In this document: positions 3,637 to 60,661 of the stretch, one piece after another
Layout: every line of letters begins with the position of its first letter
Numbering within the stretch: the stretch's first letter is position 1
Assembly: GCF_006345805.1 (NCBI RefSeq)
Contig: NC_043006.1
Location: 46,996,001 to 47,060,000 of the forward strand
DNA length: 64,000 nt
Direction of reading: 5' to 3'
From: Octopus sinensis
Lineage: Eukaryota
Translations under genes and position numbers: made by a program
The notes under the pieces: generated by a model
The model's database searches: none
What the model was told of the DNA's origin: nothing
Seen by the model: only the letters and a program-made list of their open reading frames with translations

Positions 3637-3867
3637 GACGTAGGAGTGGCTGAGTGGTAACTAGCTTGCTTACCAACCACATGGTTCCGGGTTCAGTCCC
3701 ACAGCATGGCACCATCGGCAAGTGTCTTCTACTATAGCCTCGGGCCGAATAACCCTTGTGAGTAGATTTGGTAGACGGAACCCGAAAGAAGCCCGTCGTA
3801 TATATGTATATATATATATATACGACGGGCTTCTTTCGGGTTCCGTCTATATATATATATTATATAT

Positions 3868-5335: not shown

Positions 5336-5437
5336 GATAGCTTCAATCATATTCCGTTCGTTTCATTTCGACTTAAGGATCAGTCTCAGTCTGCGCAAGT
5401 TCTCCACCTTATTATTATTATTATTATTATGAAACTT

Positions 5438-5848
5438 GCGAGCTGGTAGAATCGTTACTGCGCCTGGAAAAATGCTTATCAGCATATTATCTGTCTGTAC
5501 GTTCTGTGATCAAATTCCTGCCGAGGTCGACTTTGCCTTTTGTCCTTTAGAGTTCGATGAAGTATATACCAGTGAAACACTGAAATCGAGGTTATCGACT
5601 GATTCCCTCCCCTTAAATTTCAGGCCTTCTGCTTTTAGTAGAAAGAATTATTCTTAACGTCAATAAGGAGGTGACTTGACACATCGGTTAGCATGCCGGG
5701 AAATATATTTAGCGGGATTTCGTCCGTTTTTACATTCTGAGTTCAAAAGCCGCCACGTCGACTAAGCCTTTCATCCTTTCGGGATCAATAAATTAAAATG
5801 GATCAATTGAGTGATGGGGGTCAATGTAATCGACTTAACCTCTCCCCC
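5438..5848 (+). mobile_element. Two adjacent family B SINE copies (5438-5600, 5667-5848)
   Basis: Shared core TTCTGAGTTCAAA..GTCGACTTTGCCTTTCATCCTTT..GGGTCAATGTAATCGACTT, repeated many times in the window. Confidence 0.8.
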
Positions 5849-6600: not shown

Positions 6601-6602
<2 letters not shown>

Positions 6603-7340
6603 CGTAAGGGGGATCAGCCATCTGAATGTGGCTAGGGACAGGGCGGGGTGGTGGGGGTGTTACTGATGCTTTTAGCCCCAGGCGATCATCAATGTTACCA
6701 GAAGGACTGACACCATATCAGTGTCCTTGTTTGCCTGTAAAGGGAGGTCATCCTCCCTCGAAGATACGGATACTACATACGGACCGGTTTCGAGGTCATT
6801 GCCTCTTATCAACGTATGGTAAGTACCGCTCTTCGATGAAGGATTCCCTCCACAAGCAACATATATAAGGTTTTTCACAGTAACTACTGTCACTGATGTA
6901 GCAACACTGTCTGAAAACAATAATAAATCTCTGAACGAGATATAAACAGTAACTGCTCGACAACGTAAGGGGGATCAGCCATCTGAATGTGGCTAGGGAC
7001 AGGGCGGAGTGGTGGGGGTGTTACTGATGCTTTTAGCCCCAGGCGATCATCAACGTCACCAGAAGGACTGACACCATATCAGTGTCCTTGTTTAATGACC
7101 TCGAAACGGTCCGTATGTAGTATCCGTATCTTCGAGGGAGGATGACCTCCGTTTACAGGCAAACAAGGACACTGATATGGTGTCAGTCCTTCTGGTGACG
7201 TTGATGATCGCCTGGGGCTAAAAGCATCAGTAACACCCCCACCATCCCGCCCTGTCCCTAGCCACATTCAGATGGCTGATTCCCCTTACGTTGTCGAGCA
7301 GTTACTGTTTATATCTCGTTCAGAGATTTATTATTGTTTT
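6601..7340. mobile_element. Hammerhead-bearing 361 bp repeat unit (Penelope pLTR / retrozyme-like): 1.36 direct units plus an inverted partial copy, flanked by (TA)n
   Basis: 6601-6732 is repeated at 6962-7093 (period 361); 7094-7340 is a reverse-complement copy; (TA)n on both sides. Confidence 0.85.
6776..6818 (-). ncRNA. Minimal type I hammerhead ribozyme, U3-A8 core variant
   Basis: Minus strand CAUACG UUGAUAA GAGG caauga CCUC GAAAC CG GUC/ CGUAUG: 6 bp stem I, 4 bp stem II, palindromic stem III (ACCGGU), GUC site. Confidence 0.85.
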
Positions 7341-9626
7341 ATATATATATATATAATCACTAATGATATCTGATAGTCTTATCAAATAACAACTGTTGAA
7401 CGCCCACAAGTGTGTTTTCTCACAAAAATTCTGAATCACGAACTCTATTCTCTATCCAAATCACTTTTCTTTCTCACATTGTCGCTACCACTTCCTCTGC
7501 TTCGATCTCCCCCTCCTCTTCCTTATCATCACCAGCATTCCTTATAATGAATATCAGTATATTGGTTAAGGTCATCATCATCATTATGTGTCATCGACAT
7601 CAACATATTCAATATACCTCCTTTCTCCTTTCTTCCCTACTTCTTATACTCCCTCCTCTTTTTCTTTTTCTCACTATAATTCATTCTTTCTTTCATTTTG
7701 TAACTCCTTTTCCTCTCTCTCTCTATCTTTCTCTCGCTCGCTTTCTCTGAATTTTCACTTTCTCTCATTCCCCTTCCATGTATATCTATGTCTCTGCATC
7801 TGTCTCTCTTACAAAAAAAAAACCCCAACATATTGCTCTATATATTTTCATTGTTTCTGTAATTAAATTTCTATGTATACTTTATTCCAATTTATTTATA
7901 GTTTTTAATCTTCCATTAATAGTGATCAAAACGTAATTACTATTGATGGTATTTTAATGCTGTATCACTGATGTTATGATACTAATTTCTATATAAGAAG
8001 GTTACGAGGCTAAATGCAATTCACCCTGTAATCAAATGTCTGCGTCTATACAAAGTTTATAGTTTACAACGTAATATTCATTGTTTGCCTCTCATGTTGA
8101 TGACCTTATTGAAGAGATAATGAAAAATTAGAGATTAAAGAAATAATGGTGATAACAATGATGGGTCCCTTAATGTAACAATAGATCGGAATACATGGTA
8201 GAAAGCTACATGTCAATAAAGAGCATGCACTCTGAGTTTTGGGCTCGGTCTGCTACTAGAAGTCTTCCCTTATTGTAATGATGTGGAATCATTTTGCTAT
8301 CAATTTTTGGCAAAAGACCAGAAATTTTGGTGGAGTCAATTACATCGAATCTACAATCAACTGGTATCTATTCTATCGATCCAGAAGGGATGAAAAACAG
8401 ACATCCTTGTCGAAATTGGAACTCTGAACGTAAAGACGAACAAAATATCGCGAATAATTTTTCCCGTTGCATCTCGACGCATTTTGACGTAAAATTGTAC
8501 TGGCTGGTGTAATTTTAGGTGTCCTCTATCTGAGCAAGCGTTGGGATGTGCACTCTTAAAGATCTTTTGTTCTTTTGTTCTGTGGTTATCTTGTTCGATA
8601 TTTTCCTTGGAATTGACAACAGCATCATCAAAGGTAATTGATGAAGTCTGTACGTATATCTTAAACATATTTTAATATGAAACCCCTTTATAAGTTGAAA
8701 AGAAGTGAACATGCACAATCTGATGTCATCTGGTATCATTCTCATCATCGAGAATTCAAATATGCAGATTGTATCAACACTAATGTTTGAGCGGTTGCTC
8801 AAATCAAACGATTTTAAAGCTTGTCCACCTCATTAGGAAAGTTAAATAGGAGAAGGAATCATCTCCGTAGTGAGTTATTCTCCAACTTAGGGCGACAAAA
8901 TTATAAAACTGGACGACATCTCACCCCAACCTTATAAGTGGTTGACGCTTATAAGAAGGTATTATTTTACAGTTGTCGCTATAAAGTATAATCAATTCGC
9001 TTATATTCTGCAATGATTTAGACAAAGTGTATCCTTATCTAATAAGTCGTTCATTTACTGAAGACAGTAGGATGTGATGTGAGCGAAACGTGTCTGCTGT
9101 GCTGTGATAGTTAAGCTACTCTTGCGGATATAGAATAAATGTCAAAATGTACTTCAGTAGAATTAAGATTACGAAACCTATGTTACAGGGTCATGTCTAG
9201 TATGCCATAACAACACAGTAAATTGTAGTCAAAACGAGAATAGAAACAAAGATTTTGTCATTTAATTCTTTTTCGGGAATGTTAGAGAGCAAAATGAAAA
9301 AAGCTTAGCATTGCAGCTTTTATCGTAACTTAGCAATGAACTAGAGAAACTCTAGTTTCCTATAATGACTAGCTGCCGGAGTCTCTGCATAAAACCTCCT
9401 TCACATACTCGCTTGTTAAAAGAAAGGAAACAAATTAATTTATAGAAGCATGTGTGTACTTCGACTGAAACTTGCATATCTATAGTACGTTCTAACCACT
9501 TCGATTACCGAGAGAGAGAGAGAGAGAGAGGTCAGGAGAGAGAGGCCGAGAGAGACAGAAAGGCTGAGAGAGAGACCGAGAGAGAGACAGAAAGGCTGAG
9601 AGAGAGACTGAGAGAGAGACAGAAAG

Positions 9627-16770: not shown

Positions 16771-19590
16771 GAGGAGTGAATATTAAGCCGAGAAAAGCTA
16801 GAAAAATCAAGCAAAAATATAAAATCAAAGATCTCATAAACCTCCCTGCAACTAAGGAACTGTTGAAACAACGGATACAGTTGAAAGCTCAACGGCTTAG
16901 AAGGTATGACAAAAGAAACAAATTTTATCGACAAAATAAATTTTTTAAGACAGATGCAAAGAAATTTTATAGGGAAATTGGCAAAAATAAAATACACATA
17001 GAAGATCCACCTAAGATTGAGGAAGTGGAGGAGTTCTGGAAGAAGGTATGGAGCAACGAAAAAGAGTTTAATGCTGAGGCTGACTGGATAGAACGTGAGA
17101 AAGAGAGACTGGATGAACTTGAACAGAAATGGGAAGCAATAGGAATAGAGGAGCTAAGGTGTGTCCTTAGGAAGGCTCATAAATGGAAAACCCCAGGACT
17201 GGATCGGATCCCTAACTTCTGGCTGAATTGTTTGACAGAGGTACACGAACATCTCGCTGCATCTCTGTCTGATGTCATTCAGAACCCAGAGCAAATACCT
17301 GCTTGGCTGACTGAAGGAACCACCTACCTATTACCTAAAACCGAAGACACAAAAAACCCAAAGAATTACCGGCCAATAACATGTCTCAACACCACCTACA
17401 AAATCCTCACATCCATAATAACGGAGAGAATGTACGCTTTCCTGAACAAAATTCTATCCTTCCACAAGCTCAAAAAGGTTGTAAAAGAAACTCTTATGGG
17501 TGCAAAGACCAATTGCTCATAAACAGAATGATTGTAGAGAATTGCCGGAGCAAAAACAAAAACCTGAGTATGGCATGGATAGACTACAGGAAAGCGTATG
17601 ACAGTGTCCCACATAAATGGATACTCAAGGCCCTTGAGATATACAAGATCTCTCCTGTCGTCTCAAAATTCTTAGAGAATAGCATGACCATGTGGAACAC
17701 ACGTCTCTTTCTAAGCCATAGTAATGGGATGAGCCAGTCCAACAGCATCAACATCAAACGAGGCATCTTTCAATGTGACTCCCTCTCTCCATTACTTTTT
17801 TGCATGGCACTGATCCCACTCTCAAACGAATTGGATAGTACCAGATATGGGTACAAAGTTTTTAGTAAATTAATAAACCATCTTTTCTATATGGACGACC
17901 TAAAGCTGTTTGCCAGGAATGACCAAGAGCTAGAAGGGCTGCTAACAACTGTTAAAGAGTTTAGCAATGATATCGGAATGGATTTTGGCCTTGATAAGTG
18001 TGCTAAAGCAACTTTTGTAAGAGGCAAGCTCAGGCAAACAGCTTCTGTTAAATTAGATATTGACACTACCATCAAGGAACTTGACCCACAGGAAAGTTAC
18101 AAATACCTAGGAATCAACGAAGGAGATGGTATACATCATGCTACTATGAAGGAAAAATAAGAAAGGAATACTATAGGAGAATAAGGCTTGTACTGAAGAC
18201 TGAACTCAACTCCAAAAATTGCATTGAGGCCATTAACACCCTGGCACTTCCAGTAGTCCAGTACAGTTTTAATATCATTAACTGGAACCTTACGGAACTC
18301 CAACGCTTAGACAGGAAGAAGAAAGTTACTGACATCCAAGAGCATGCACCACCCTAAGGCAGATGTAGACCGCTTGTACCTACCTAGAAGCAGCGGGGGG
18401 AGAGGAATGATGCAATTAGAGCTGTGCTATAAGACCTCTACTGTAGGAATGAACAGGTACCTATCTAGTACAAAGGACTGGATGCTGCGACTTGTGTGCG
18501 AACACGAAAGCAACAAAAAGCTGCATTCTATTGTCAAGGAAGCTTATAAGTTCGAAAGGGAACTAGACATTAACCTTGAATCAGATGAAGAGCCGGAAAC
18601 CACTGCTACCAAGCAAGCAAAGCGAATCAAGCAGACTGCAAAAAAGAACGGGCAGAATCAAATGAGAGGCGGTGGAGCCAGAAGCCCCTGCATGGACAAT
18701 ATATTCTCCGAAGCCAAATGCTGATGTAGACCAAGCAACAACCCATCAGTGGCTGAAGAGCTCTGGATTGAAAGCAGAGACTGAAGGTTTCATAATGGCA
18801 GCACAAGATCAAAGCTTGTTTACCAGAAATTACCAGGCTAACGTTCTCCGAAACGGTACTGACCCTAAATGCAGATTCTGGGACACATTTTACGAAACGA
18901 TAGACCATCTCGTTTCGGGATGTCCTGTGCTGACACCAAACGAATACAAAAATCGCCACGATAGGGTAGGACAGTATATACATTGGAAGATATGTAAACA
19001 CTACAAATCCGACACTCCTGCTAACTGGTATGAACACCATCCTCAACCAGTTGTTGAAGGTAAAGATGTCACCATCCTCTGGGATTTTCCAGTCAACACT
19101 GACAGAACGATCAAGGCTAATCGACCAGACATAATTGTTAAAGACAGGGAAGAAAATACCTGCAGACTAATAGAAGTAAGCGTCCCCACTGATAAAAATG
19201 TATCTGTCAAGGAATTTGACAAACTTAGTAAATATAAGGACCTGGAAATCGAAATACAGAGGATGTGGAATCTTAAAACAAAAACTGTTCCTGTTATTGT
19301 AGGTGCCCTAGGTATGATAAAAAAGGGATGTCAGAAACACCTAGACAATATCCCTGGAAAACCATGTCTCAAGGAAATCCAAAAGATTGTGCTAACAAGT
19401 ACTGCCCACATCCTTAGAAAAACCCTATCAATGTAAATGTCTGTGTTTGCATTACATGGAGATATATCTCTACTTCCCCTCCCCAAGCTTTCAGCTATAT
19501 TTCAACAACTCTTAACCTTCACTTGCCCTAGGGCGCTGGGTGTGCCCCGGCAGGTGATTGCATCAAACATGCAGATTAAAAGTAAATGAC
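16771..19590 (+). mobile_element. R4/Dong-clade non-LTR retrotransposon, 5'-truncated and frameshifted (RT, zinc knuckle, restriction-like endonuclease) inserted in (AAT)n
   Basis: RT motifs NYRPITCL, WIDYRKAYDSV, RGIFQCDSLSPLLF, YMDDLKL; CRFW..ETIDHLVSGC knuckle; RPDIIV..IEVSVP..K RLE motif; (AAT)n on both flanks; ORF broken at about 17460, 18155, 18320 and 18680. Confidence 0.95.
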
Positions 19591-19635
<45 letters not shown>

Positions 19636-20584
19636 TAACTTGTGTGAGAAATTCACGGAAAATAGAAAATGTAAGCATCTTTAAACAGTGTACTGGTGTC
19701 ATCAGAATTGTTTGCATATTACGACGGCCTGTCTTTACGTTCTGAGTTTAAATTCTGCCAAGATCAGCTTTACCTTTCTTCCTTTAGGGGTCGATAAATT
19801 AAGTACCAATTGTGTATTGGGGTCAACCTAATCAACTGGCCCCATCTCCACAAACGTTTGAGTCACAAACATTTGTGACAGTTACAGAATATAGAAAGTA
19901 ATGTAACACCAATCACTATATAATCCAACCAAAATATCTCAGTTACACGAACGTAAACGGAATTACTATTTAACCTTAAAAAACATCGTACATATTCAAA
20001 GAACCTTCTTCGTTAAGTGGTACGGAACGATTTGTTTTTTTCTGCTATTCTTTTATTCTTTCACTTGTTTCAGGTATTTGAGGACTGCCATGCTGGAGCA
20101 CCACATTTTAGTCGAAGAAATTGATCCCTGGACTTATTCCCTGTAAGCCTGGTTCTTTCTCTCTGCTAATCTTAATGTAGATCTGATATATAATCAAACA
20201 AAACCAGAGGCCAACAAAGGCCTTTATGGCTTCTCCATTGTAGGAGCTTACACTTAAAGACATTGCTCTCGTATATATTTAACCGGTATTACTATATTTA
20301 ACATAAATTAATGTAATCTGGGTAAATTTGAAATGACGTGACTTTCCAAGAGAAGAATTCTAGTGTTATGAAAATAGTTGTCATATAACTTTAATTATGA
20401 TAACCAAGAGACCCTACTTGGAAAATCAAAGTTATGGGAGAAAATCTAGGCTAGTCTTTCCATAAGAGATTTGTAGTGGACAACATGTAGTGGACAAAAT
20501 ATGACCAGTGTTATAGAAAATACTAGAAACTATATAACATGCAATTTACATGTAAGATTTTATACAATGGTATACTCAAAAGGG

Positions 20585-21577: not shown

Positions 21578-21723
21578 ATCAACAATCAAGGAACGGCCAT
21601 AATAGGCCATTCACCCACTAGAAATAACAGCCAAAGCTTCAAAGCTTGACTTTTATTTGCGGTTGAAGCTTTGGCTGTTATTTCTAGTGGGTGAATGGCC
21701 TATTATGGCCGTTCCTTGATTGT

Positions 21724-21727
<4 letters not shown>
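21578..21727. repeat. Perfect 65 bp inverted repeat with 20 nt loop
   Basis: 21578-21642 is the exact reverse complement of 21663-21727. Confidence 0.95.
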
Positions 21728-23801: not shown

Positions 23802-25456
23802 AATATATATATATGTGTGTGTATGTGTATATGCATATATGTGCCTATATGTATGCATATATATGTATATATATATAAATATTCATCATATAAATGTTTA
23901 TGAGATCTATATGAAAGATACGTATACGTACATGTATGTATGTATGTATGTACACAATTGTATATGATGCATTACATTTGAAATTATAATCCCTGAAGAA
24001 TCCTTATACATTTCATTCATTGGATATATCATGCAGTTCATGAAGTTTCGAAAACTGTTAAAATGTTTCGCTGCAAAATGGAAGCATCGCAAAGAGATAA
24101 ACCAATCCACAGTATTTAAGATTAAGGAAGTGATTAGCAAACGGAAAACGTTTTATCTTAAAAGTAGATTCCGCTCTATTAATCTCCAAATAGATTTTTA
24201 CTACTTATTTTACGTTTTAATGTTGTCCTCGATTCACGTCCCTACGTATTTTGCCTTACACGTACATTATCAATATTGATAGGGCTGTTGATAGGGCTGT
24301 TACACATACATTATCAATGTTGATGGGGAAATGTTGGCTCCGTTTATGCTCTTTGATAAATTTGGATCACTTCTGAACACAAATATTTATATAAGGAGCG
24401 AATGAGAGTAACCTTTGCATGGTATATCTACTTCATAGAAGTAACACGCGTGTATATCATAAATGATATACTATGGGCCATGGAAAAAAATGGTAAGTCA
24501 CATATGATACGCTACCTGACAAGAATGCTTACAACAGTTTGAATGCTATTTGCTCAATGAAAACTTGCATGAGGCAGAAAATATTCTTTAGATATTACTA
24601 AACTGTTGACCAATAAATTTACAGTTTTTAATACAGAGCATCTCAGATCCTATGCCAAATAATCTTATGGTCTAATTCCAGTGTCTATCACCAAGCAGTT
24701 AGTTAAATTGTAATTACTCGATCCTTAATAAAAAAAATGCCTTTTATTTAAGAGTCTCATCGAGTAGCTTTTGTGATTATGTGTCATAGCTGGAGTTATC
24801 AATTATCATAACACTTAGGTTTATTATTTTTCTTCAGGAAGTGAACAGGCAGAATCATTAGCACAGCGTGTTCAGCAGTATTTCGTCTGTCGTTACGCTT
24901 TGATTTGAAATTCCTCCGAGGTCAACATACCCTTTCTTCCTTTAGGGGTCAATAAAATAAGTGCCAACTGAACCCTAGGGTCAATGAAATCGACTTTCCC
25001 ACTTCTTCGAATTTGCTGACCTTCAGTCAAAATCTAAAACTCTTGATATTTATGTGCATTGATATAAACCAGATCATTTTAATACACTTGCGTGTTTCTC
25101 TTCTTATCAGATTGAAAGTAATCCGAAAGTAATTTCAATGTATGCGATCATAAACAATCGGAAAAATGTGTAAATATCTTTTGTTAAAGGTGCTTCTACT
25201 TAAAAGTGAACAACCGATAGCTTTTATCGTGTGTGTACTGGTTGGAATGATACCAAATTTCTCAACAGTAAACAAAAAATAACAAAACAAAAGACATTCA
25301 TTGTTTGATACAAGCATGCTTCTACTATAGCGTCCAACGCTAAGTATTCTTAGAAAGAGCTAAGTAACCCAAATCTGCTCCATCAAAAATGTCAACGACA
25401 TAGTAGCCGGTCTTTCCACTCTGATAACAGAGGCTAGTTTTACGATTGCTTTAATA

Positions 25457-47345: not shown

Positions 47346-47505
47346 CCAATTAAGGACTGAACACGAAAGGTGGACAGTCACATGCTAGATATAGACGTCA
47401 AATCGCCATTCTCCACAAGGATTATGTTTCTCAAATAAAAATAAAATTCAGCACGACCTAAGCAATGGATGAGACAAAAGAAATATACTTTAATGGAATA
47501 ATTAC

Positions 47506-47565
47506 CTACGTACTGCGTTTTCAGCTATTAATATCACAAGGATATCTGTAGCTTCATCAGCGTAG
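47506..47565 (-). ncRNA. Type I hammerhead, mirror copy (stem III altered: GAAAACGCAGUA)
   Basis: Reverse complement of 48190-48249 except in stem/loop III. Confidence 0.7.
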
Positions 47566-48189
47566 TTTGTTATGAGCATAATATGCTGTACTAGGTGAAA
47601 AACGGTACCGGAGTCCCGCATGCAAAAAGTACAACCTATTACGTTCGATGTATCTTTCGAATGCCTCTACTTTTGGCGCGCTGATAATCGAAAACTAGCC
47701 TGCAGCCAATAATTAGCAGCAGTCAATTTATCGGTTTGAGAACATATATTTCATATTTAAAAATTAAGGGTAGAAATTGATATTAGTCAATTAAAACCAG
47801 TGGTCTAGCACATTAAAAAGAATCCGAAGATTAAAATATTCATATATACCAATTAAGGTATCTAGCATGTTGACTGTCCACCTTTTCGTGTTCAGTCCTT
47901 AATTGGTATATATAAATATTTTAATCTTCGGATTCTTTTTAATGTGCTAGACCACTGGTTTTAATTGACTAATATCAATTTCTACCCTTAATTTTTAAAT
48001 ATGAAATATATGTTCTCAACCGATAATTGACTGCTGCTAATTATTGGCTGCAGGCTAGTTTTTCGATTATCAGCGCGCCAAAAGTAGAGGCATTCGAAAG
48101 ATACATCCGAACGTAATAGGTTGTACTTTTTGCATGCGGGACTCCGGTACCGTTTTTCACCTAGTACAGCATATTATGCTCATAACAAA

Positions 48190-48249
48190 CTACGCTGATG
48201 AAGCTACAGATATCCTTGTGATATTAATAGCTGAAACTGCAGTACGTAG
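48190..48249 (+). ncRNA. Minimal type I hammerhead ribozyme with canonical core
   Basis: CUACG CUGAUGA AGCUA..UAGCU GAAAC UGCA GUA/ CGUAG; palindromic loop III; predicted cut between 48244 and 48245. Confidence 0.92.
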
Positions 48250-48531
48250 GTAATTATTCCATTTAAGTATATTTCTTTTGTCTCATCCATTGCTTTAGGT
48301 CGTGCTGAATTTTATTTTTATTTGAGAACATAATCCTTGTGGAGAATGGCGATTTGACGTCTATATCTAGCATGTTGACTGTCCACCTTTTCGTGTTCAG
48401 TCCTTAATTGGTATATATAAATATTTTAATCTTCGGATTCTTTTTAATGTGCTAGACCACTGGTTTTAATTGACTAATATCAATTTCTACCCTTAATTTT
48501 TAAATATATATATATATATATTGTATGTATG

Positions 48532-48583
<52 letters not shown>

Positions 48584-48757
48584 TTTTATATTTATATTCT
48601 TTTCCTTGTTTCAGTCATTTGATTGCAGTCATGCTGCAGCACCTTCTTTAGTCGAGCAAATCGACCCCAGAACTTATTCTTGTTAAGCATAGTACTTATT
48701 CGATCGGTGTCTTTTACCGAGATGGTAGAATACGAGGGCATAAAGACACCGACATCA

Positions 48758-50370
48758 GTTGTAGGATGCGTCACATTTGCCACAGATGATCTCATATACA
48801 ACATAGGTACTATGGCACAATTCAGGGTCAATGATGAGGCAGTTCGATAATGTGCACTCTTCAGAGTAGTGAGGTATGTTGTTTTTGGACACAGCTTTTC
48901 TCAGGGAAGGTCCAGTGTGCAATATCTGTATGGCGAGTCCTTCCCTCCAGACTGCGTGTTGTATCGCTGCAGTAGTTCTGTCATCAAAGTGTGGTGTCTT
49001 TAGGAAGCACGTGCCGGACTTCAGATTATGATGGTTCTCTCAGGATTTAGTGACCTGGATGTTCTTTAGGTCTCTGAGGAAATACTTGGTGTTAACGGCT
49101 TTGTCGGTCACGTTGCTGCAATTGTTGTTAATACCTGCAATCTCGTTTCTCATGTGTGCGGCTTTAGTTCTGGTGGGTAAGGCTGATAGGTAATGGACGA
49201 AAAGTTTTCTATTAGCGGCTTTTTTGTAGAATTTGGTAAATATTGAGTCTTCCACTATGATCTTGAATAGAAAGTCGAGTAGAGACAGGATTCCAGATTC
49301 GTCTGGGTGTTCAATCTCAAATTTGTTGTTTATGTTGGAGTTATTGAAGGTCCGGTGTATGTTAAAGGTCTCATACCTGGAGGACGTCATGATAAGAATA
49401 TCAGCAACGTACTTGGAGAAGAAGGTGCATGAACGGCAGGTATTGAATGCTGTGCGTTCTAGCTTATCCACCTACCTGATGGCCAGCAGGCCTGAAAGGC
49501 TGAATCCAATAGGTGGGCCGGAAATTTGTAAATCACACCGTTATATTGGAAATAGTTGTTACCGATTATAATGGTCAATAACTCTCGTATGTCGGGGGGT
49601 GTGAGGCCGAAGAGTTGAAGGTTGGTTGATAGGGAGGTGAGAGAAGATGAACGAAAAGGAGGAGGTTGCAGGGGAGGAAGGTGGAGCAATGAGATGTGTG
49701 TGTGTGGGGGGGGGGTGGAGATTAGGACGTGGTGTAGTCTATGAGGATATCAACGGCTCTGAGAGAAGGTACAGAGGTGTAGAGGGATACTACACCTAAA
49801 TTAAACGGGTATTTGTTAGTTTTAAGTATGGAGAGCTCGTCATTTTTGAGTCTTGTGAAGATTTCATGGGAGCTACTGACGTGTTCGGGCAATGCGTGAA
49901 AGGGTTTGAGGAGTTTAGAGACGAGCCAGCAAATCTTATAGAAAGGACCGTAAATACCTGATACTATGGGCCTAATTTGAAGCTTAGGTCCGGGTTTGTG
50001 AGTCGTTTTTATTACATGGTAGAATGGAAGGATGTTGTTTTTATATGTTTTTTAGTCTAGTCTTCTTAGAGAGATTCCTTTGATGACAGATGTTGATGTT
50101 GGTCTCCAGTTGTTGAGGTATGATGTTGTGAACCTTTTTGTATAGTGTGGTGCCACTGAGGTACTCGATAGCTAGTTTGCTTTAGGTGGGTTTGTTTATA
50201 ATGCAGAATTATTTCCCTCTGTCTGAAGGTATGTAGATGAGGTTTTTGTTTCTTAAGTTTTGCAAGGTCAGGAATTGGGATTTAGTAAGTTTGCATGATG
50301 GGGCAGGAAGTTTATCTAATATGTTAAGTATGAATTGTTTGAGTGCAGCTAATTTGCTGTTGAGTTCAGG
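48758..50370 (-). mobile_element. Penelope-like element relic (RT followed by Cys-rich linker and GIY-YIG start), catalytically dead
   Basis: Minus-strand peptides YIPSDRG, THKPGPKLQIRPIVSG, GVVSLYTSVP, NNYFQYNG, KYVADI (degenerate RYVDD), FEIEHP..LSLLD, FYKKAANRKLFVHYLSALP, CTLSNC..LCHSTYVVYEIICGKCDASY; cut off by a family A SINE tail at about 48585-48757. Confidence 0.9.
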
Positions 50371-51786
50371 GTTGAGAGGGAGAAGGTGGAGTGGGTTATT
50401 GAGGTTGTAGACGGAAATCTAAGTGTAGCAGGAGAGAAAGGAGAGGAAGAAGTAGAAGAAAAGAGATGGCGATGATGATAATGATAAAGACAGCGAATAT
50501 GACGATGGGGAAGACGTAGGGGCGATGGAGAGGGAGGAGGAGATAGGAGGTAAAATGGGTAGATGACGCCGATGACGGTGATGAAGACAGTAAAGATGAC
50601 GATGGAGAAGATGTAGATGATGGTGGGGGTAATATCGGTGATGATGTCGATAGTGAGGATATTGGCAGCGATGACTATGAGCATGAAGATGATGCGGCAG
50701 GAGAAGGGTTTACTACCACCACCACCCACACGGCCCCACCATCACCACCTAATATATCCATACCTACGACGGCTGCTGCTGCTGCTGCTGCTAACGATAA
50801 CGTGGTTACAGACCTTACTGATTCTCTCACACAAGCAGAGAAGTAACCGCTAAGCTACGGACCCAAGTTTATTCTAACATAACAAACTGGAGGTAGAAAC
50901 CAACTTCGATGTGATTTACCTTGCATTGTTTTGGTCTTAACCATGATCCTATACAATGCTTCATAGCCATTATTTCCCGCGACGTGTAATCACGGAGGTG
51001 TGAGTTCGGGTCTCATAGCCGGCCGCCAACACATTTTTTTCTGCAAAATAGGGATAGATTATCCTGTTCACGCTATATTATTAGCATTATCCTGCGTTTG
51101 AGATTTTGCAAACACTTCTTTAACTGTCTAAGAGATCTCATCTCTTCTAAAGCAAACTTCGTTTGTTTCTTTCGGTTCATCGTAATTTGAATTTATATAT
51201 ATTGCTTTTACTGTCTTGTTTTGTCCTTACTGTCCTGTTCTTGTTACCACTTTTACCCCGCCGCAAAAAGTCCCAAATTTTATTTAATTTGCTTTGCGGG
51301 AAGGACTGTTTCAACGAAGTGGCGTCTTGTCCTTACCTTACAAACGCGGAGTAGACGAAACGGGGACAACTGAAGAAGGGGAATATTCCTTGTGTTGTAT
51401 GTCTTGTACTCTGTTTTTACGTTGTTTGAAAAAAAGTTCGTTTCTATGTTTTTGTTTTTATATTTTCGTTTCTCATTGTGTTCAACTTTTGTTCATGTCC
51501 TGTACCCATATATGCATGTATATATACATATAGATGTAGGTGTGTACATATATGTATGTAAATATGCATATATTTATATATTATTTATATTATATGATAT
51601 ATATATATATATGAATGAATCTTTTCATAATTAAATCTACATGCTTTCTTCTTCCAGTCAACGATAACCACCACTAACCGGAGAGATACTTATATATAAC
51701 CATGGTACATACTTGGTACGTACTTGGTTTTCTGAGCATTCTTTACACACATAGGCTCACAAACTCTAGATACAAATATGTATATA

Positions 51787-54510: not shown

Positions 54511-55792
54511 CAGGATGCGGTGAATAAATTGTCGTCCAAATCACGCAAAAATGAGATTAACATTGACACCTCATTTTAACAGATATATTTACCCAAATCA
54601 CATAATACTAAAGAGTAAATTTATTCAATAAAATCGTCATTGGCTTCGTCCGCGGCGTCCAAACGACTTCGGAATCTCCTGCAACTCTTCTGGATAGTCT
54701 CCTTATTTAGCTTGGTAAATGCTGCTATAATCTTTGCCTTCAGTTGATATTTGGTTCTACGAGGAGTTTTGTTGGTCTCTCGTTCAAATTCACCCACACA
54801 TAATAACCAGAGGAATTGCAATCTAGGGAGTTAAGTGGCCAGATGTTAGGGATGATTTGGTCAAAGAAATTGTCTGACAGCCATGACTGGGTTCTCGTGT
54901 TCGTGTGACATGGTGCAGAGTCCTTTTGCCAGACATAGAGTCTTCCAGCAGCCACCGTCTTGACTTAGGCCAGCACTACCTCCTCCAGGCATTTGATGTA
55001 GGTCTCCGCGTTGGATTTGAGGCCGTGTGGGAAGATGAACGTAAGAATTACGTCGCCATCACTAGTGATCACTCCAAATACCATGTTAACTGGATTTTTG
55101 ATTTTTATCACTTTCGGTACAATTTTTTAGGGACACGGCAAGTTAATGGTTGTTCTGTGTATTCACCATCTGATCCTGGAAGAAAATTTTCTCGTCTGAG
55201 AAAAACCAAAGCATGTTCGGTTTGAGGGGATGCTTGGGTTTGTTCAAAAGCTTCGTAGCGCAGTCTTTCCTCTTGTCCTTGATGGCTTGGGATAAAAATT
55301 GGCCCTCTCTCATTTTCTCTGAGGAGTAGCGAATGTCTTCATGCACTACCTGCTTCATAGGAAACTCAGAAACTCCCATGTTCCTGGCGATGGACCTGTT
55401 TGACTTGGAGGGATTGTTGTCAATCATGGCCTACATCATACCAACAAATTCAGGAGTTATTTTCTGTTTAGAACACTCATAGTGAATTTTTCAAACTACT
55501 GTACCTTCGTAATCACCATTAGGCTCATCCAACTCTTTCCGTATACCTTGCACTGTCCTAAGATTGACACCAAAATACTCTGAAATGTTCGTATTGGATG
55601 TTCCAGGGAGAATGGCAAGCAGTACAGTATGTTGTTACCAAGTCTCTGACTGAGTGAATTGCGTCATGGTGTTGTCTTTCTCACAGTGGGTGCCCAACAG
55701 ACCCTATTATACAGTGTAGTCGACGAGATCAAAAACAAATAATGCACATGGGCGAAATTAAGAACATGAAATGGCGACAATTTACCTATCGC

Positions 55793-55797
<5 letters not shown>
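54511..55797 (-). mobile_element. Tc1/mariner superfamily DD37D (maT-type) transposon, near full length, degenerate
   Basis: TIRs CAGGATGCGGTGAATAAATTGTCG / CGACAATTTACCTATCGCATACT; WFFSDEK, WQKDSAPCH, WPLNSLDCNSSG with 37 residues between the second D and the mutated third site. Confidence 0.88.
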
Positions 55798-55833
<36 letters not shown>

Positions 55834-55882: not shown

Positions 55883-55986
55883 TATATATATATACAGATA
55901 TATACATATATCCTACCACACATATCTATAAATGTTCTAAAATCTACTCAGCTTTGGTTTTTTATCTCTTTACGAAAAAGATTTAC

Positions 55987-56042
<56 letters not shown>

Positions 56043-56051
56043 TGTATATAT

Positions 56052-56240
56052 GGAAAAAAATCAAGGTAGAAAATGTGCTAAAATAATTTTATAAAAAAAC
56101 TTTTCAGAAAAATATGGAACGCTTCACGAATTCATGGCCCCTATGCTAGGATGACACGCAGATTCGTGAAGCATTCCATATTTTTCTGAAATGTTTTTTA
56201 TGGAATTATTTTAGAATTTTCTACCTTTACTTTTTTCTCT
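56052..56240. pseudogene. RNU6: U6 snRNA 3' fragment (56133-56185 +) fused to a ~55 nt tail, with an inverted copy of the U6 3' end plus tail (56052-56132 -)
   Basis: CATGGCCCCTATGCTAGGATGACACGCAGATTCGTGAAGCATTCCATATTTTT matches the conserved metazoan U6 3' half at 48/53; 56108-56132 is a 25/25 reverse complement of the U6 3' end. Confidence 0.93.
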
Positions 56241-56322
56241 ATATATATCAACTCGTGTGTTCCTTTTCAACCTTCTATACGCACAGACACATACATACAT
56301 ACACACACACATATATATATAT

Positions 56323-56749: not shown

Positions 56750-57775
56750 TTCTACACTCGGCACAGCGCCCGATATTCTGGAGAGGGTATCAGTCGATTA
56801 GATCAACCCCCTGTAAATAACTGATACTTAATTTATCAATCTCGAAAAGAAGAAAAGCAAAGTCGACCTCAACAGTATTCGAGCACAGAAGATAAAGACA
56901 GACGAATTACTGCTAAGCAATTTCACCTGGCGTGCTAACGTTTCTGGCAGCTGGCAACATTTGGGATATGATTTCTTTATTTCTTTATTGCCCACACGAG
57001 CCTAAACATAGAGGGGACAAACAAGGACAGACAAAGAGATTAACTCGATTACATCGACTCCACTGCATAACTGGTACTTAATTTATCGACCCCGAAATGA
57101 TACAAGGCGAAATCGACGTCAGCGAAATTTGAACTCAGAATGTAACGGCAGACGAAGTACCTATTTCTATTTCTTTACTACCCAAAAGGGGCTTAACACA
57201 GAGAGGACAAACAAGGACAGACAAAGAGATTAACTCGATTACATCGACTCCACTGCATAACTGGTACTTAATTTATCGACCCCGAAATGATACAAGGCGA
57301 AATCGACGTCGGCGAAATTTGAACTCAGAATGTAACGGCAGACGAAGTACCTATTTCTATTTCTTTACTACCCAAAAGGGGGTTAACACAGAGAGGACAA
57401 ACAAGGACAGACAAACGGAGTAAGTCGATTATATCGACCCCAGTGCGTAACTGGTACTTATTTATTCGACCCCGAAAGGATGAAAGGCAAAGTCGACCTC
57501 AGCGGAATTTGAACTCAGAACGTAACGGCAGACGAAATACCGATTTCTTTACTACCCACACGGGGCTAAACGTAGAGAGGACAAACAAGGACAGACAAAC
57601 GGGTTAAGTTGATTATATCGACCCCAGTGCGTAACTGGTACTTATTTAATCGACCCCGAAAGGATGAAAGGCAAAGTCGACCTCGGCGGAATTTGAACTC
57701 AGAACGTAGCGGCAGACGAAATACCACTAAGCATTTCGCCCGGCGCGCTAACGTTTCTGCCGGCTCGCCGCCATT
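56750..57775 (-). mobile_element. Family B SINE cluster: one copy (56750-56955) plus a tandem array of four ~180-190 bp units (56969-57775)
   Basis: GAGAGGACAAACAAGGACAGACAAA..GGCAGACGAA repeated four times. Confidence 0.9.
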
Positions 57776-60497: not shown

Positions 60498-60661
60498 TAA
60501 AGTAAAGGATATTTGCCAACATAATGTAGCTGTCCCGAACAGGACACATAAGGACAGTGTGTCGCATAGCCAGCTAGAAACGATGTTTCTTGGGGCTAAA
60601 GCAACAGTAGCATCCTCCCTTTAGGACAACCACATTATGTTGGCAAATAGCCTTTACTTTA
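60498..60661. mobile_element. 164 bp MITE-like element
   Basis: About 38 bp imperfect TIRs TAAAGTAAAGGATATTTGCCAACATAATGT..TGTCC / GGACA..ACATTATGTTGGCAAATAGCCTTTACTTTA. Confidence 0.75.

What the first reader, a model, noticed from the sequence alone, without database searches (positions are those of the whole stretch)
56052..56240. U6 snRNA 3' end fused to a short tail and duplicated head-to-head between (TA)n tracts: candidate U6/hammerhead-product chimera retrotransposed by a Penelope-like RT
Seen: the U6 3' half ends in exactly five Ts and continues into CTGAAA(A/T)GTTTTTT..ATTATTTTAG..TTTTCTACCTT..(TA)n. The same U6-end/tail junction is present in inverted form on the left, so U6 plus tail was copied as one unit. 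The tail end (AATTTTCTACCTTTACTTTTTT then TA repeats) resembles the end of the hammerhead unit at 48480-48505 (AATTTCTACCCTTAATTTTT then TA repeats). Established: mature human U6 ends in about five Us with a 2',3'-cyclic phosphate, and RtcB ligates it to 5'-OH RNAs, producing U6/L1 chimeras; hammerhead cleavage leaves a 5'-OH. Inference: U6 was ligated to the 5'-OH product of a Penelope/retrozyme hammerhead, and the chimera was inserted by priming on both strands of a (TA)n break. I know of no described U6/ribozyme-product retro-chimera. The U6 end chemistry in this organism is unknown.
Basis: partly seen in the sequence, partly recalled or inferred. Interest (0 to 1): 0.9.

Follow-up and report, generated by a model that had tools for sequence, protein, structure and literature searches.

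The report
Palindromic U6 pseudogene fragment at (TA)n
An old, decayed copy of the last half of the U6 spliceosomal RNA plus a 54-base T-rich extension sits head-to-head with a shorter inverted copy of itself next to TA repeats; this layout matches other Penelope-type retroelement insertions in the same window, but nothing shows that the extension is a hammerhead-ribozyme cleavage product.

Summary
The structure is real. Bases 56133-56185 are the 3' half of U6 (Rfam model positions 53-105), ending in T5. A 54-nt tail follows (56186-56239). Bases 56052-56132 are an inverted copy of the tail plus the last 25 nt of U6. The arms are about 79 nt and 87% identical, with a 30-nt loop. A 67-nt (TA)n lies on the left; the right has only (TA)4.5.

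Its layout and polarity match a young hammerhead-bearing retrozyme-like unit X (47346-48507). Both have 5'-truncated ends at the centre and 3' ends outward at (TA)n. This matches published Penelope-like element (PLE) insertion architecture, so RT-mediated insertion into (TA)n is my preferred mechanism (about 0.55).

The U6/hammerhead-product ligation idea is unsupported:
- The tail occurs nowhere else in the window.
- X's cleavage site lies 263 nt from its end, and the sequence after it is unlike the tail's start.
- The 16/18 resemblance of the ends is no better than background.
- Five Ts fit a U6 gene terminator equally well.
- The tail is unusually rich in T-runs, like a Pol III terminator zone, which suggests native U6 gene flank.

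DNA-level fold-back of a resident U6 locus remains a live rival. The source genome is absent from all searchable collections, so the decisive genome-wide test could not be run.

The parts
55985..56051 (.). Left imperfect (TA)n tract abutting the palindrome (putative target microsatellite)
   Evidence: Read directly; listed as tract 55987-56036 plus degenerate extension
56052..56107 (-). Inverted copy of the tail. Its reverse complement reads CTGAAAAGTTTTTTTATAAAATTATTTTAGCACATTTTCTACCTTGATTTTTTTCC
   Evidence: arm alignment
56108..56132 (-). Inverted copy of the last 25 nt of U6. Its reverse complement is AATTCGTGAAGCGTTCCATATTTTT, with 0 differences from canonical U6. This copy is 5'-truncated at about U6 nt 81
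56132..56161 (+). Unduplicated 30-nt loop of the palindrome. It is U6 model positions about 53-80 of the direct copy
56133..56185 (+). Direct U6 3' half (model positions 53-105) with 5 differences from canonical U6 and ending in T5. It lacks the 5' stem-loop, the ACAGAGA box and any promoter
56186..56239 (+). Direct copy of the 54-nt tail. It is 56% T and has four runs of T>=4
56240..56248 (.). Right short (TA)4.5, followed by unique sequence
47346..48507 (.). Comparator, not part of the U6 unit: retrozyme-like unit X. A full 505-nt unit lies at 48003-48507 (+), preceded by a 144-nt partial tandem copy at 47859-48002 (+) and an inverted copy at 47346-47858 (-). The arms are 513 nt and 97-99% identical, the loop is 38 nt, and (TA)n lies on both sides
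48190..48249 (+). Comparator: type I hammerhead motif in X (ctacg CUGAUGA stem II GAAA C-UGCA-G UA|cgtag), cleaving after 48244. It has a short stem III with a palindromic loop, as in PLE-type minimal hammerheads
   Evidence: descriptor scan, 0.07 expected per shuffled window; not found by Rfam

Best explanation
This is an old, non-functional retro-copy, not a U6 gene. An RNA (or its cDNA) carrying the 3' part of U6, its T5 and a 54-nt T-rich extension was reverse-transcribed from a (TA)n-primed 3' end and integrated into a (TA)n microsatellite. It took the head-to-head form typical of Penelope-like element (PLE) machinery: a direct 5'-truncated copy (from U6 nt about 53) abutting a shorter inverted 5'-truncated copy (from U6 nt about 81), with both 3' ends facing outward into the TA repeat. 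That form can arise either by priming on both strands of the break or by snap-back self-priming of the first cDNA. The U6/tail junction existed before the duplication. The two arms have since diverged by about 13%.

Shown: the anatomy, the polarity, the TA bounding, and the same architecture in a hammerhead-bearing unit nearby.

Inferred: that an RT made it, and which RT.

The origin of the tail is open. I lean to the source U6 gene's own terminator-zone flank, meaning the template was a non-Pol III or read-through transcript of a U6 locus that ran into a downstream (UA)n. The alternative is a retroelement 3' module joined to mature U6. I split the 0.55 roughly evenly between these two.
For: Palindrome geometry and significance.

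U6 identity and truncation points.

Unit X, whose sense is fixed independently by its hammerhead, has the same polarity and form: 5'-truncated ends at the centre, a 38-nt loop, and 3' ends at (TA)n. It also shows a partial tandem copy.

Two more TA-bounded palindromes lie in the same 64 kb: Y at 6601-7340 and Z at 21578-21727.

(TA)n tracts cover only 4.9% of the window in 95 tracts, so repeated exact TA bounding is not chance.

A degenerate PLE-like RT/GIY-YIG remnant lies at about 48.76-49.89 kb on the minus strand. Its one database relative carries RVT_1.

Literature: PLE insertions are 5'-truncated, often partial tandems with an adjacent inverted 5'-truncated copy, and biased to (TA)n (PMC8557442). 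PLEs mobilise host sequences in trans, and self-priming has been proposed for the inverted junctions (PMC3846280).

For the flank reading of the tail: 4 T>=4 runs in 54 nt, on top of the U6 T5, is a density reached by 0.16-0.33% of windows.
Against: This is a single locus. No second copy of the tail or of the junction exists in the window or in any searchable collection, so retro-origin is inferred from architecture alone.

No target-site duplication can be read inside a (TA)n.

The right TA tract is only 9 nt.

The unit has no pLTR or hammerhead of its own.

A DNA-level fold-back with microhomology joining in TA repeats would give the same picture.

Pol III itself could hardly read through five T-runs, so the flank reading needs a different polymerase or an antisense template.
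Confidence: 0.55

Rival explanations
1. DNA-level fold-back at a resident U6 locus. A U6 gene or pseudogene with its native T-run-rich 3' flank once lay here. A break at about U6 nt 53 was repaired when the resected 3' end folded back and copied U6 nt 81-107, the flank and the start of a TA run. The new end was then joined to a nearby (TA)n by microhomology. No RNA intermediate was involved.
For: The T5 plus four further T-runs look like a Pol III terminator zone. The tail is single-copy. (TA)n is its own reverse complement and very frequent, about one tract per 670 nt, so it is an easy microhomology partner. A SINE 3' end at 3772-3849 shows a TA-centred snap-back, so DNA or cDNA fold-backs do happen here.
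Against: Both outer ends of the palindrome fall exactly at TA repeats. Its polarity and loop size copy those of retrozyme-like X, which also has a partial tandem copy that a simple fold-back does not make. There is no usable microhomology at the inner junction CACGAATT|CATGG. No trace of a U6 promoter or 5' half remains.
Confidence: 0.25
2. RNA-level chimera that does not involve a ribozyme site. Mature U6, at its U5 3' end, was joined to a 3' fragment of a (TA)n-targeting retroelement RNA. The join came either from RT template jumping from the donor's 5' end onto the U6 3' end, or from ligation to some 5'-OH end. The chimera was then inserted PLE-style. This overlaps the best explanation's second option for the tail.
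For: U6 is the classic partner in LINE-1 chimeras, fused in sense orientation at its U-tract. Both ligation and template switching are accepted routes (PMC6789731; PMC11838501). The junction lies exactly after T5. There is a weak 16/18 match of the tail end to the end of X, at the same distance from the TA boundary.
Against: The tail matches no repeat in the window. The match to X is at background level. X itself has no fixed 3' end, since its two copies meet (TA)n at different internal TA-rich sites; this removes the idea of a conserved terminal recognition motif. U6 here is 5'-truncated, unlike the full-length U6 of L1 chimeras. The T-run cluster is unexplained by this model.
Confidence: 0.2
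3. U6 ending in a 2',3'-cyclic phosphate was ligated by RtcB to the 5'-OH left by hammerhead self-cleavage of a Penelope/retrozyme transcript, and the chimera was retrotransposed by a PLE RT.
For: The chemistry is plausible. RtcB joins U6>p to 5'-OH RNAs (PMC6789731) and efficiently circularises hammerhead-cleaved metazoan retrozyme monomers in vitro (PMC7229834). A hammerhead-bearing unit and a PLE remnant exist in the window. The integration architecture fits PLEs.
Against: There is no hammerhead upstream of any tail copy. In X the cut site is 263 nt from the end, not 54, and the post-cleavage sequence is unrelated to the tail's start. The tail is too short and lacks the core boxes needed to be a retrozyme monomer. 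End similarity is at chance level. Five Ts are non-diagnostic. The T-run cluster suggests gene flank.
Confidence: 0.07
4. Assembly artefact, or one member of a dispersed hairpin/MITE-like repeat family that happens to contain a U6-derived segment.
For: Palindromes are a known failure mode of long-read assemblies and of PLE-rich regions (PMC8557442). The unit folds into a long hairpin. Its TA flanks resemble a TA target-site duplication.
Against: The arms differ by about 13%, mostly by substitutions, which an artefactual fold-back read would not produce. No second copy occurs in 64 kb. The arm sequence is the U6 3' end plus tail, not a recognisable transposon TIR.
Confidence: 0.05

Closest known systems
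U6/LINE-1 chimeric retropseudogenes of mammals (Buzdin/Gilbert/Garcia-Perez; Moldovan et al. 2019, PMC6789731)
   Same: U6 is in sense orientation and fused exactly after its terminal T-tract to an unrelated downstream sequence, and the two were copied together as one unit.
   Different: U6 here is 5'-truncated at nt about 53 and about 81, rather than full-length. The partner is not an identifiable retroelement. There is no poly(A), no readable TSD and no L1-type target. The integration is a head-to-head palindrome at (TA)n.
Penelope-like element insertion architecture: partial tandem plus adjacent inverted 5'-truncated copy, with (TA)n bias in Naiad/Neptune (PMC8557442; PMC3846280)
   Same: An inverted 5'-truncated copy abuts a direct copy. 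The 3' ends face outward and TA microsatellite lies at the borders. The same form is seen for the hammerhead unit X in this window. PLEs are reported to mobilise host sequences in trans.
   Different: The unit carries no pLTR, hammerhead or PLE ORF. Reported trans-mobilised host genes in Adineta vaga are framed by pLTRs, and this unit is not. An snRNA cargo has not been described; a literature search found none.
Metazoan non-LTR retrozymes: tandem type I hammerhead units, RtcB-circularised (Cervera and de la Pena 2020, PMC7229834)
   Same: Unit X nearby fits this kind: a 505-nt unit, 1.3 tandem copies, a type I hammerhead with a 2-bp stem III and low GC. It shares the U6 unit's integration form.
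   Different: The U6 tail itself shows no hammerhead, no tandem arrangement and no significant similarity to X.
Fold-back (palindromic) duplications at AT-rich repeats
   Same: An inverted duplication with a short unique spacer sits next to a self-complementary (TA)n.
   Different: In TA-driven fold-backs the TA repeat usually sits at the centre, as at the SINE end at 3772-3849. Here it is at the outer borders.

Membership tests
Functional U6 snRNA gene (Rfam RF00026) | Full-length RNA of about 105 nt with the 5' stem-loop, ACAGAGA box and AGC triad | tested here: not met
   Only model positions 53-105 are truly present. In the full-length alignment the '5' half' is the inverted 3' end, and ACAGAGA is not matched.
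Functional U6 snRNA gene (Rfam RF00026) | Conserved ISL/3' half sequence ending in a T-run terminator | tested here: met
   The 53-nt segment has 5 substitutions relative to canonical U6 and ends in T5.
U6/retroelement chimeric retropseudogene (L1 type) | Full-length U6 in sense orientation, joined at its U-tract to the partner | tested here: inconclusive
   The sense orientation and the junction after T5 are met. Full length is not met, because both copies are 5'-truncated.
U6/retroelement chimeric retropseudogene (L1 type) | The partner is the 3' end of an identifiable retroelement | tested here: inconclusive
   The tail matches no repeat in the window. The best match, 16/18 to the end of X, is at background level. 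No genome-wide search was possible.
U6/retroelement chimeric retropseudogene (L1 type) | Poly(A) tail and flanking target-site duplication | tested here: not met
   There is no poly(A). The borders are TA repeats, in which a TSD cannot be read.
PLE-type insertion | A 5'-truncated direct copy with an adjacent inverted 5'-truncated copy (head-to-head) | tested here: met
   The polarity is fixed by the U6 orientation.
PLE-type insertion | Insertion into a microsatellite, (TA)n for Naiad/Neptune-type elements | tested here: met
   A 67-nt (TA)n lies on the left and (TA)4.5 on the right. TA tracts cover 4.9% of the window.
PLE-type insertion | pLTR / hammerhead / PLE-derived cis sequence within the mobilised unit | tested here: not met
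   No hammerhead descriptor hit or Rfam hit lies in 56052-56240. There is no significant similarity to X.
PLE-type insertion | A PLE RT-EN source in the genome | tested here: inconclusive
   Broken ORFs lie on the minus strand at 48755-49892 with RT and GIY-YIG-like motifs, read by eye. The single database relative, P0121, has RVT_1. Pfam does not hit the window fragments themselves.
   No parent copies are available. In X, the only hammerhead unit, the site is 263 nt from the end and the following sequence is unrelated to the tail.

The most novel reading that the evidence does not exclude
Mature U6 snRNA, with a 2',3'-cyclic phosphate end, was ligated by an RtcB-type ligase to the 5'-OH left by hammerhead self-cleavage of a now-extinct retrozyme/PLE transcript. 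The chimera was then inserted into (TA)n by a Penelope-like RT. This would be the first U6/ribozyme-product retro-chimera and the first snRNA cargo of a PLE.
Probability: 0.07. Interest if true: 0.8.

Novelty: new variant of a known kind. Interest (0 to 1): 0.35.

Why it matters
If the RT-mediated reading holds, this would be a case of Penelope-type machinery copying a spliceosomal snRNA sequence. U6 retro-copies are so far documented for LINE-type elements, and my one literature search linked no paper on U6 snRNA to Penelope elements. It would also give a polarity-marked example of how head-to-head PLE junctions form: 5'-truncated ends at the centre, a 30-38-nt loop, and TA-primed 3' ends. 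That mechanism is still undefined.

If the tail proves to be native U6 gene flank, or the structure proves to be a DNA fold-back, this is an ordinary decayed pseudogene fragment.

As it stands, the finding is one old locus with no replicates. Its value is as a lead for a genome-wide census, not as a result.

Tried and rejected
1. Genome-wide test of the tail and junction. The exact junction pattern gave 41 hits in viral contigs, all chance matches without U6 upstream. It gave 0 hits in metagenome contigs and 0 in genome contigs. The tail-only pattern gave 2 chance hits in metagenomes and 0 in genome contigs.

2. Reaching same-species DNA through proteins.
- The window's LINE RT ORF is not on record.
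- Its best relatives are only 74% identical, and the fetched locus L044 is another organism: 69% nt identity over the LINE only.
- The PLE fragment has a single 61% relative on an 862-nt contig.
- A SINE-encoded peptide has no relatives at all.
The species is therefore not in the collections.

3. Rfam hammerhead models. They gave nothing at gathering score, or at E<=10, in either the whole window or the X region. The hammerhead rests on my own descriptor scan.

4. Ribozyme search in Y: none found.

5. A conserved 3'-terminal motif shared by tail and X: rejected. The score is at background, and X's two copies meet (TA)n at different internal positions.

6. Pol III read-through as the source of the tail: rejected. 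It would need read-through of five T-runs.

7. tRNA genes, to sample Pol III terminator flanks in this genome: none in the window.

8. Literature search for cephalopod U6 gene flanks: nothing usable.

9. A microRNA or hairpin-RNA role: Rfam's miRNA-like hits are low-complexity or palindrome artefacts far below gathering scores. I did not pursue this.

Full report
WHAT IS THERE

Bases 56133-56185 (+) are the 3' half of U6 snRNA. On their own they align to Rfam U6 model positions 53-105 at 39.5 bits. The whole-window scan gives 44.7 bits, just over the gathering score of 44. That 'full-length' alignment is misleading: the apparent 5' half is the inverted 3' end, which mimics it because U6's telestem strands are complementary.

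U6 ends in T5 (56181-56185) and continues into a 54-nt tail (56186-56239). Bases 56052-56132 are the reverse complement of the tail plus the last 25 nt of U6.

The arms (56053-56131 and 56162-56237) are 87% identical with three small indels, and the loop is 30 nt. The RNA fold z-score is -13.

The direct copy starts at U6 nt about 53 and the inverted copy at nt about 81. Both are therefore 5'-truncated, their 5' ends meet at the centre, and their 3' ends point outward. The left border is a 67-nt imperfect (TA)n. The right border is only (TA)4.5, followed by unique DNA.

The direct U6 segment carries 5 substitutions relative to canonical U6. The inverted 25 nt carry none. Differences between the arms are mostly substitutions. 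The duplication is therefore old and is not an assembly fold-back.

CONTEXT IN THE SAME WINDOW

- **Layout of X.** A 505-nt unit X (48003-48507, +) is preceded by a 100%-identical 144-nt partial tandem copy (47859-48002). Before that lies an inverted copy (47346-47858) that mirrors 47897-48411. This gives 513-nt arms, 97-99% identical, and a 38-nt loop. (TA)n lies on both outer sides.
- **Its hammerhead.** X carries a type I hammerhead at 48190-48249: CUGAUGA, an 11-bp interrupted stem II, GAAA, a 2-bp stem III with a UGCA loop, and GUA with cleavage after 48244. It passes a structural descriptor that yields 0.07 hits per shuffled window. Rfam does not report it.
- **Polarity.** The hammerhead fixes X's sense, and its polarity matches the U6 unit: 5'-truncated ends at the centre and 3' ends at (TA)n.
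- **Other palindromes.** Two more TA-bounded palindromes occur. Y (6601-7340) has a 361-nt unit in 1.4 tandem copies plus an inverted copy. Z (21578-21727) has 65-nt arms that are 100% identical. The sense of Y and Z is unknown.
- **Frequency of TA tracts.** There are 95 tracts covering 4.9% of the window. They are frequent, but not so frequent that exact TA borders on four palindromes could be chance.
- **A possible RT source.** A broken PLE-like RT/GIY-YIG remnant lies on the minus strand at 48755-49892. I read its motifs by eye. Its only database relative has RVT_1.

Published descriptions of Penelope-like elements match this picture. They report 5' truncation, partial tandems, an adjacent inverted 5'-truncated copy, (TA)n bias, trans-mobilisation of host sequences, and a proposed self-priming step (PMC8557442; PMC3846280).

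MECHANISM

I conclude that the integration most likely came from the same (TA)n-linked, PLE-type reverse-transcription process that built X (about 0.55). It was primed either on both strands of a TA break or by snap-back of the first cDNA.

The alternative is a DNA-level fold-back of a resident U6 locus, joined in TA repeats by microhomology (about 0.25). It cannot be excluded from one locus. It explains the outer TA borders, and the resemblance to X, less naturally.

THE TAIL

1. The tail is single-copy in the window apart from its own inverted copy.
2. In X the cleavage site is 263 nt from the (TA)n end, and the sequence after it (CGTAGGTAATT...) is unlike the tail's start (CTGAAA...).
3. 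The 16/18 match between the tail end and the end of X has shuffle p = 0.055-0.085. Among 188 other TA-adjacent ends it is out-scored by an unrelated one.
4. X has no fixed 3' end. Its two copies meet (TA)n at different internal TA-rich sites. This points to microhomology priming rather than a conserved terminal motif.
5. Five Ts are what a U6 gene with a T5 terminator would also show. From memory, human RNU6 genes have T5 followed by further T-runs.
6. The tail contains four more T>=4 runs in 54 nt, a density reached by only 0.16-0.33% of windows. This looks like a Pol III terminator zone. It suggests the tail is native U6 gene flank, copied from a transcript not made by Pol III, or copied as DNA.

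RtcB joins U6>p to 5'-OH RNAs (PMC6789731) and circularises hammerhead-cleaved retrozyme monomers (PMC7229834). I therefore keep the model at about 0.07 rather than zero. A broader RNA-level chimera, formed by template jump or by ligation at a non-ribozyme end, gets about 0.2.

WHAT COULD NOT BE DONE

The decisive test is a genome-wide search for the tail, for the junction and for U6 gene flanks, together with the orthologous site in a sister species. It needs the source genome. That genome is not in any collection available here.

From the tRNA-derived SINE sequence, and from memory only, the window looks like an octopus genome. I could not verify this.

VERDICT

PLE-style insertion at (TA)n is a reasonable reading. 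The U6/hammerhead-product ligation is unsupported. This is one old locus with a modest claim to novelty: possibly the first snRNA-derived cargo in a PLE-type palindromic insertion. I found no paper linking U6 snRNA and Penelope elements in this way. Interest is 0.35.

Noticed in passing
window 47346-48507: Retrozyme-like 505-nt unit X with a type I hammerhead (48190-48249). It is present as 1.3 tandem copies plus an inverted copy, forming a palindrome with 513-nt arms and a 38-nt loop between (TA)n tracts. The inverted copy's hammerhead (about 47500-47565, minus strand) has two substitutions in stem III (GAAAACGCAGUA instead of GAAACUGCAGUA) and fails the descriptor.
   Followed up: yes
window 6601-7340: Second TA-bounded palindromic repeat, Y. 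A 361-nt unit is followed by a 132-nt partial tandem copy and then an inverted copy of 248 nt, all 97-100% identical. No ribozyme was found by Rfam or by my hammerhead descriptor, and its sense is unknown.
   Followed up: partly
window 21578-21727: Perfect palindrome Z: 65-nt arms at 100% identity and a loop of about 19 nt. It is followed directly by a 63-nt (TA)n on the right only. It is single-copy in the window, and Rfam scores it as miRNA-like, below threshold.
   Followed up: partly
window 3643-3849: A tRNA-derived SINE (A and B boxes readable) whose 3' end abuts (TA)n. On the other side of a 16-nt TA stretch lies a 27-nt inverted copy of that same 3' end. This is a tail-to-tail snap-back with the TA repeat at the centre. 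Another SINE 3' end abuts (TA)n at about 46750.
   Followed up: partly
window 48755-49892 (minus strand): Degenerate Penelope-like element remnant: broken ORFs with RT motifs and a GIY-YIG-like YVVYEIICGKC segment. It is truncated by a SINE-like piece (48595-48671) next to the (TA)n that also borders X.
   Followed up: partly
window 16776-19436 (+): A non-LTR (LINE) reverse transcriptase in three overlapping broken frames (RVT_1, E = 1.7e-21). Its best database relatives are only 74% identical, from unnamed ENA assemblies.
   Followed up: partly
window 37100-37763; also 57075-57766, 30576-30880, 5437-5796, 24841-24962, 19731-19805, 8369-8469: A dispersed and locally tandem repeat family of about 130-170 nt, 72-83% identical between copies. 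One pair lies in inverted orientation at 37.1/37.6 kb, and there is a cluster about 1 kb downstream of the U6 unit.
   Followed up: no
window 51362-51459 (+): A second, weak hit of my hammerhead descriptor (CUGAAGA ... GAAA ... UU|, with a 3-bp stem II, long loops and a GU-rich stem I). It is probably spurious.
   Followed up: no
window 60498-60661: A small element with 38-nt terminal inverted repeats (92% identical) and an 88-nt spacer, possibly MITE-like.
   Followed up: no
window 55895-55986: A unique segment of about 90 nt wedged between two long (TA)n tracts, just left of the U6 palindrome and preceded by a (CT)n run at 55790-55830. It may be another small TA-targeted insertion.
   Followed up: no
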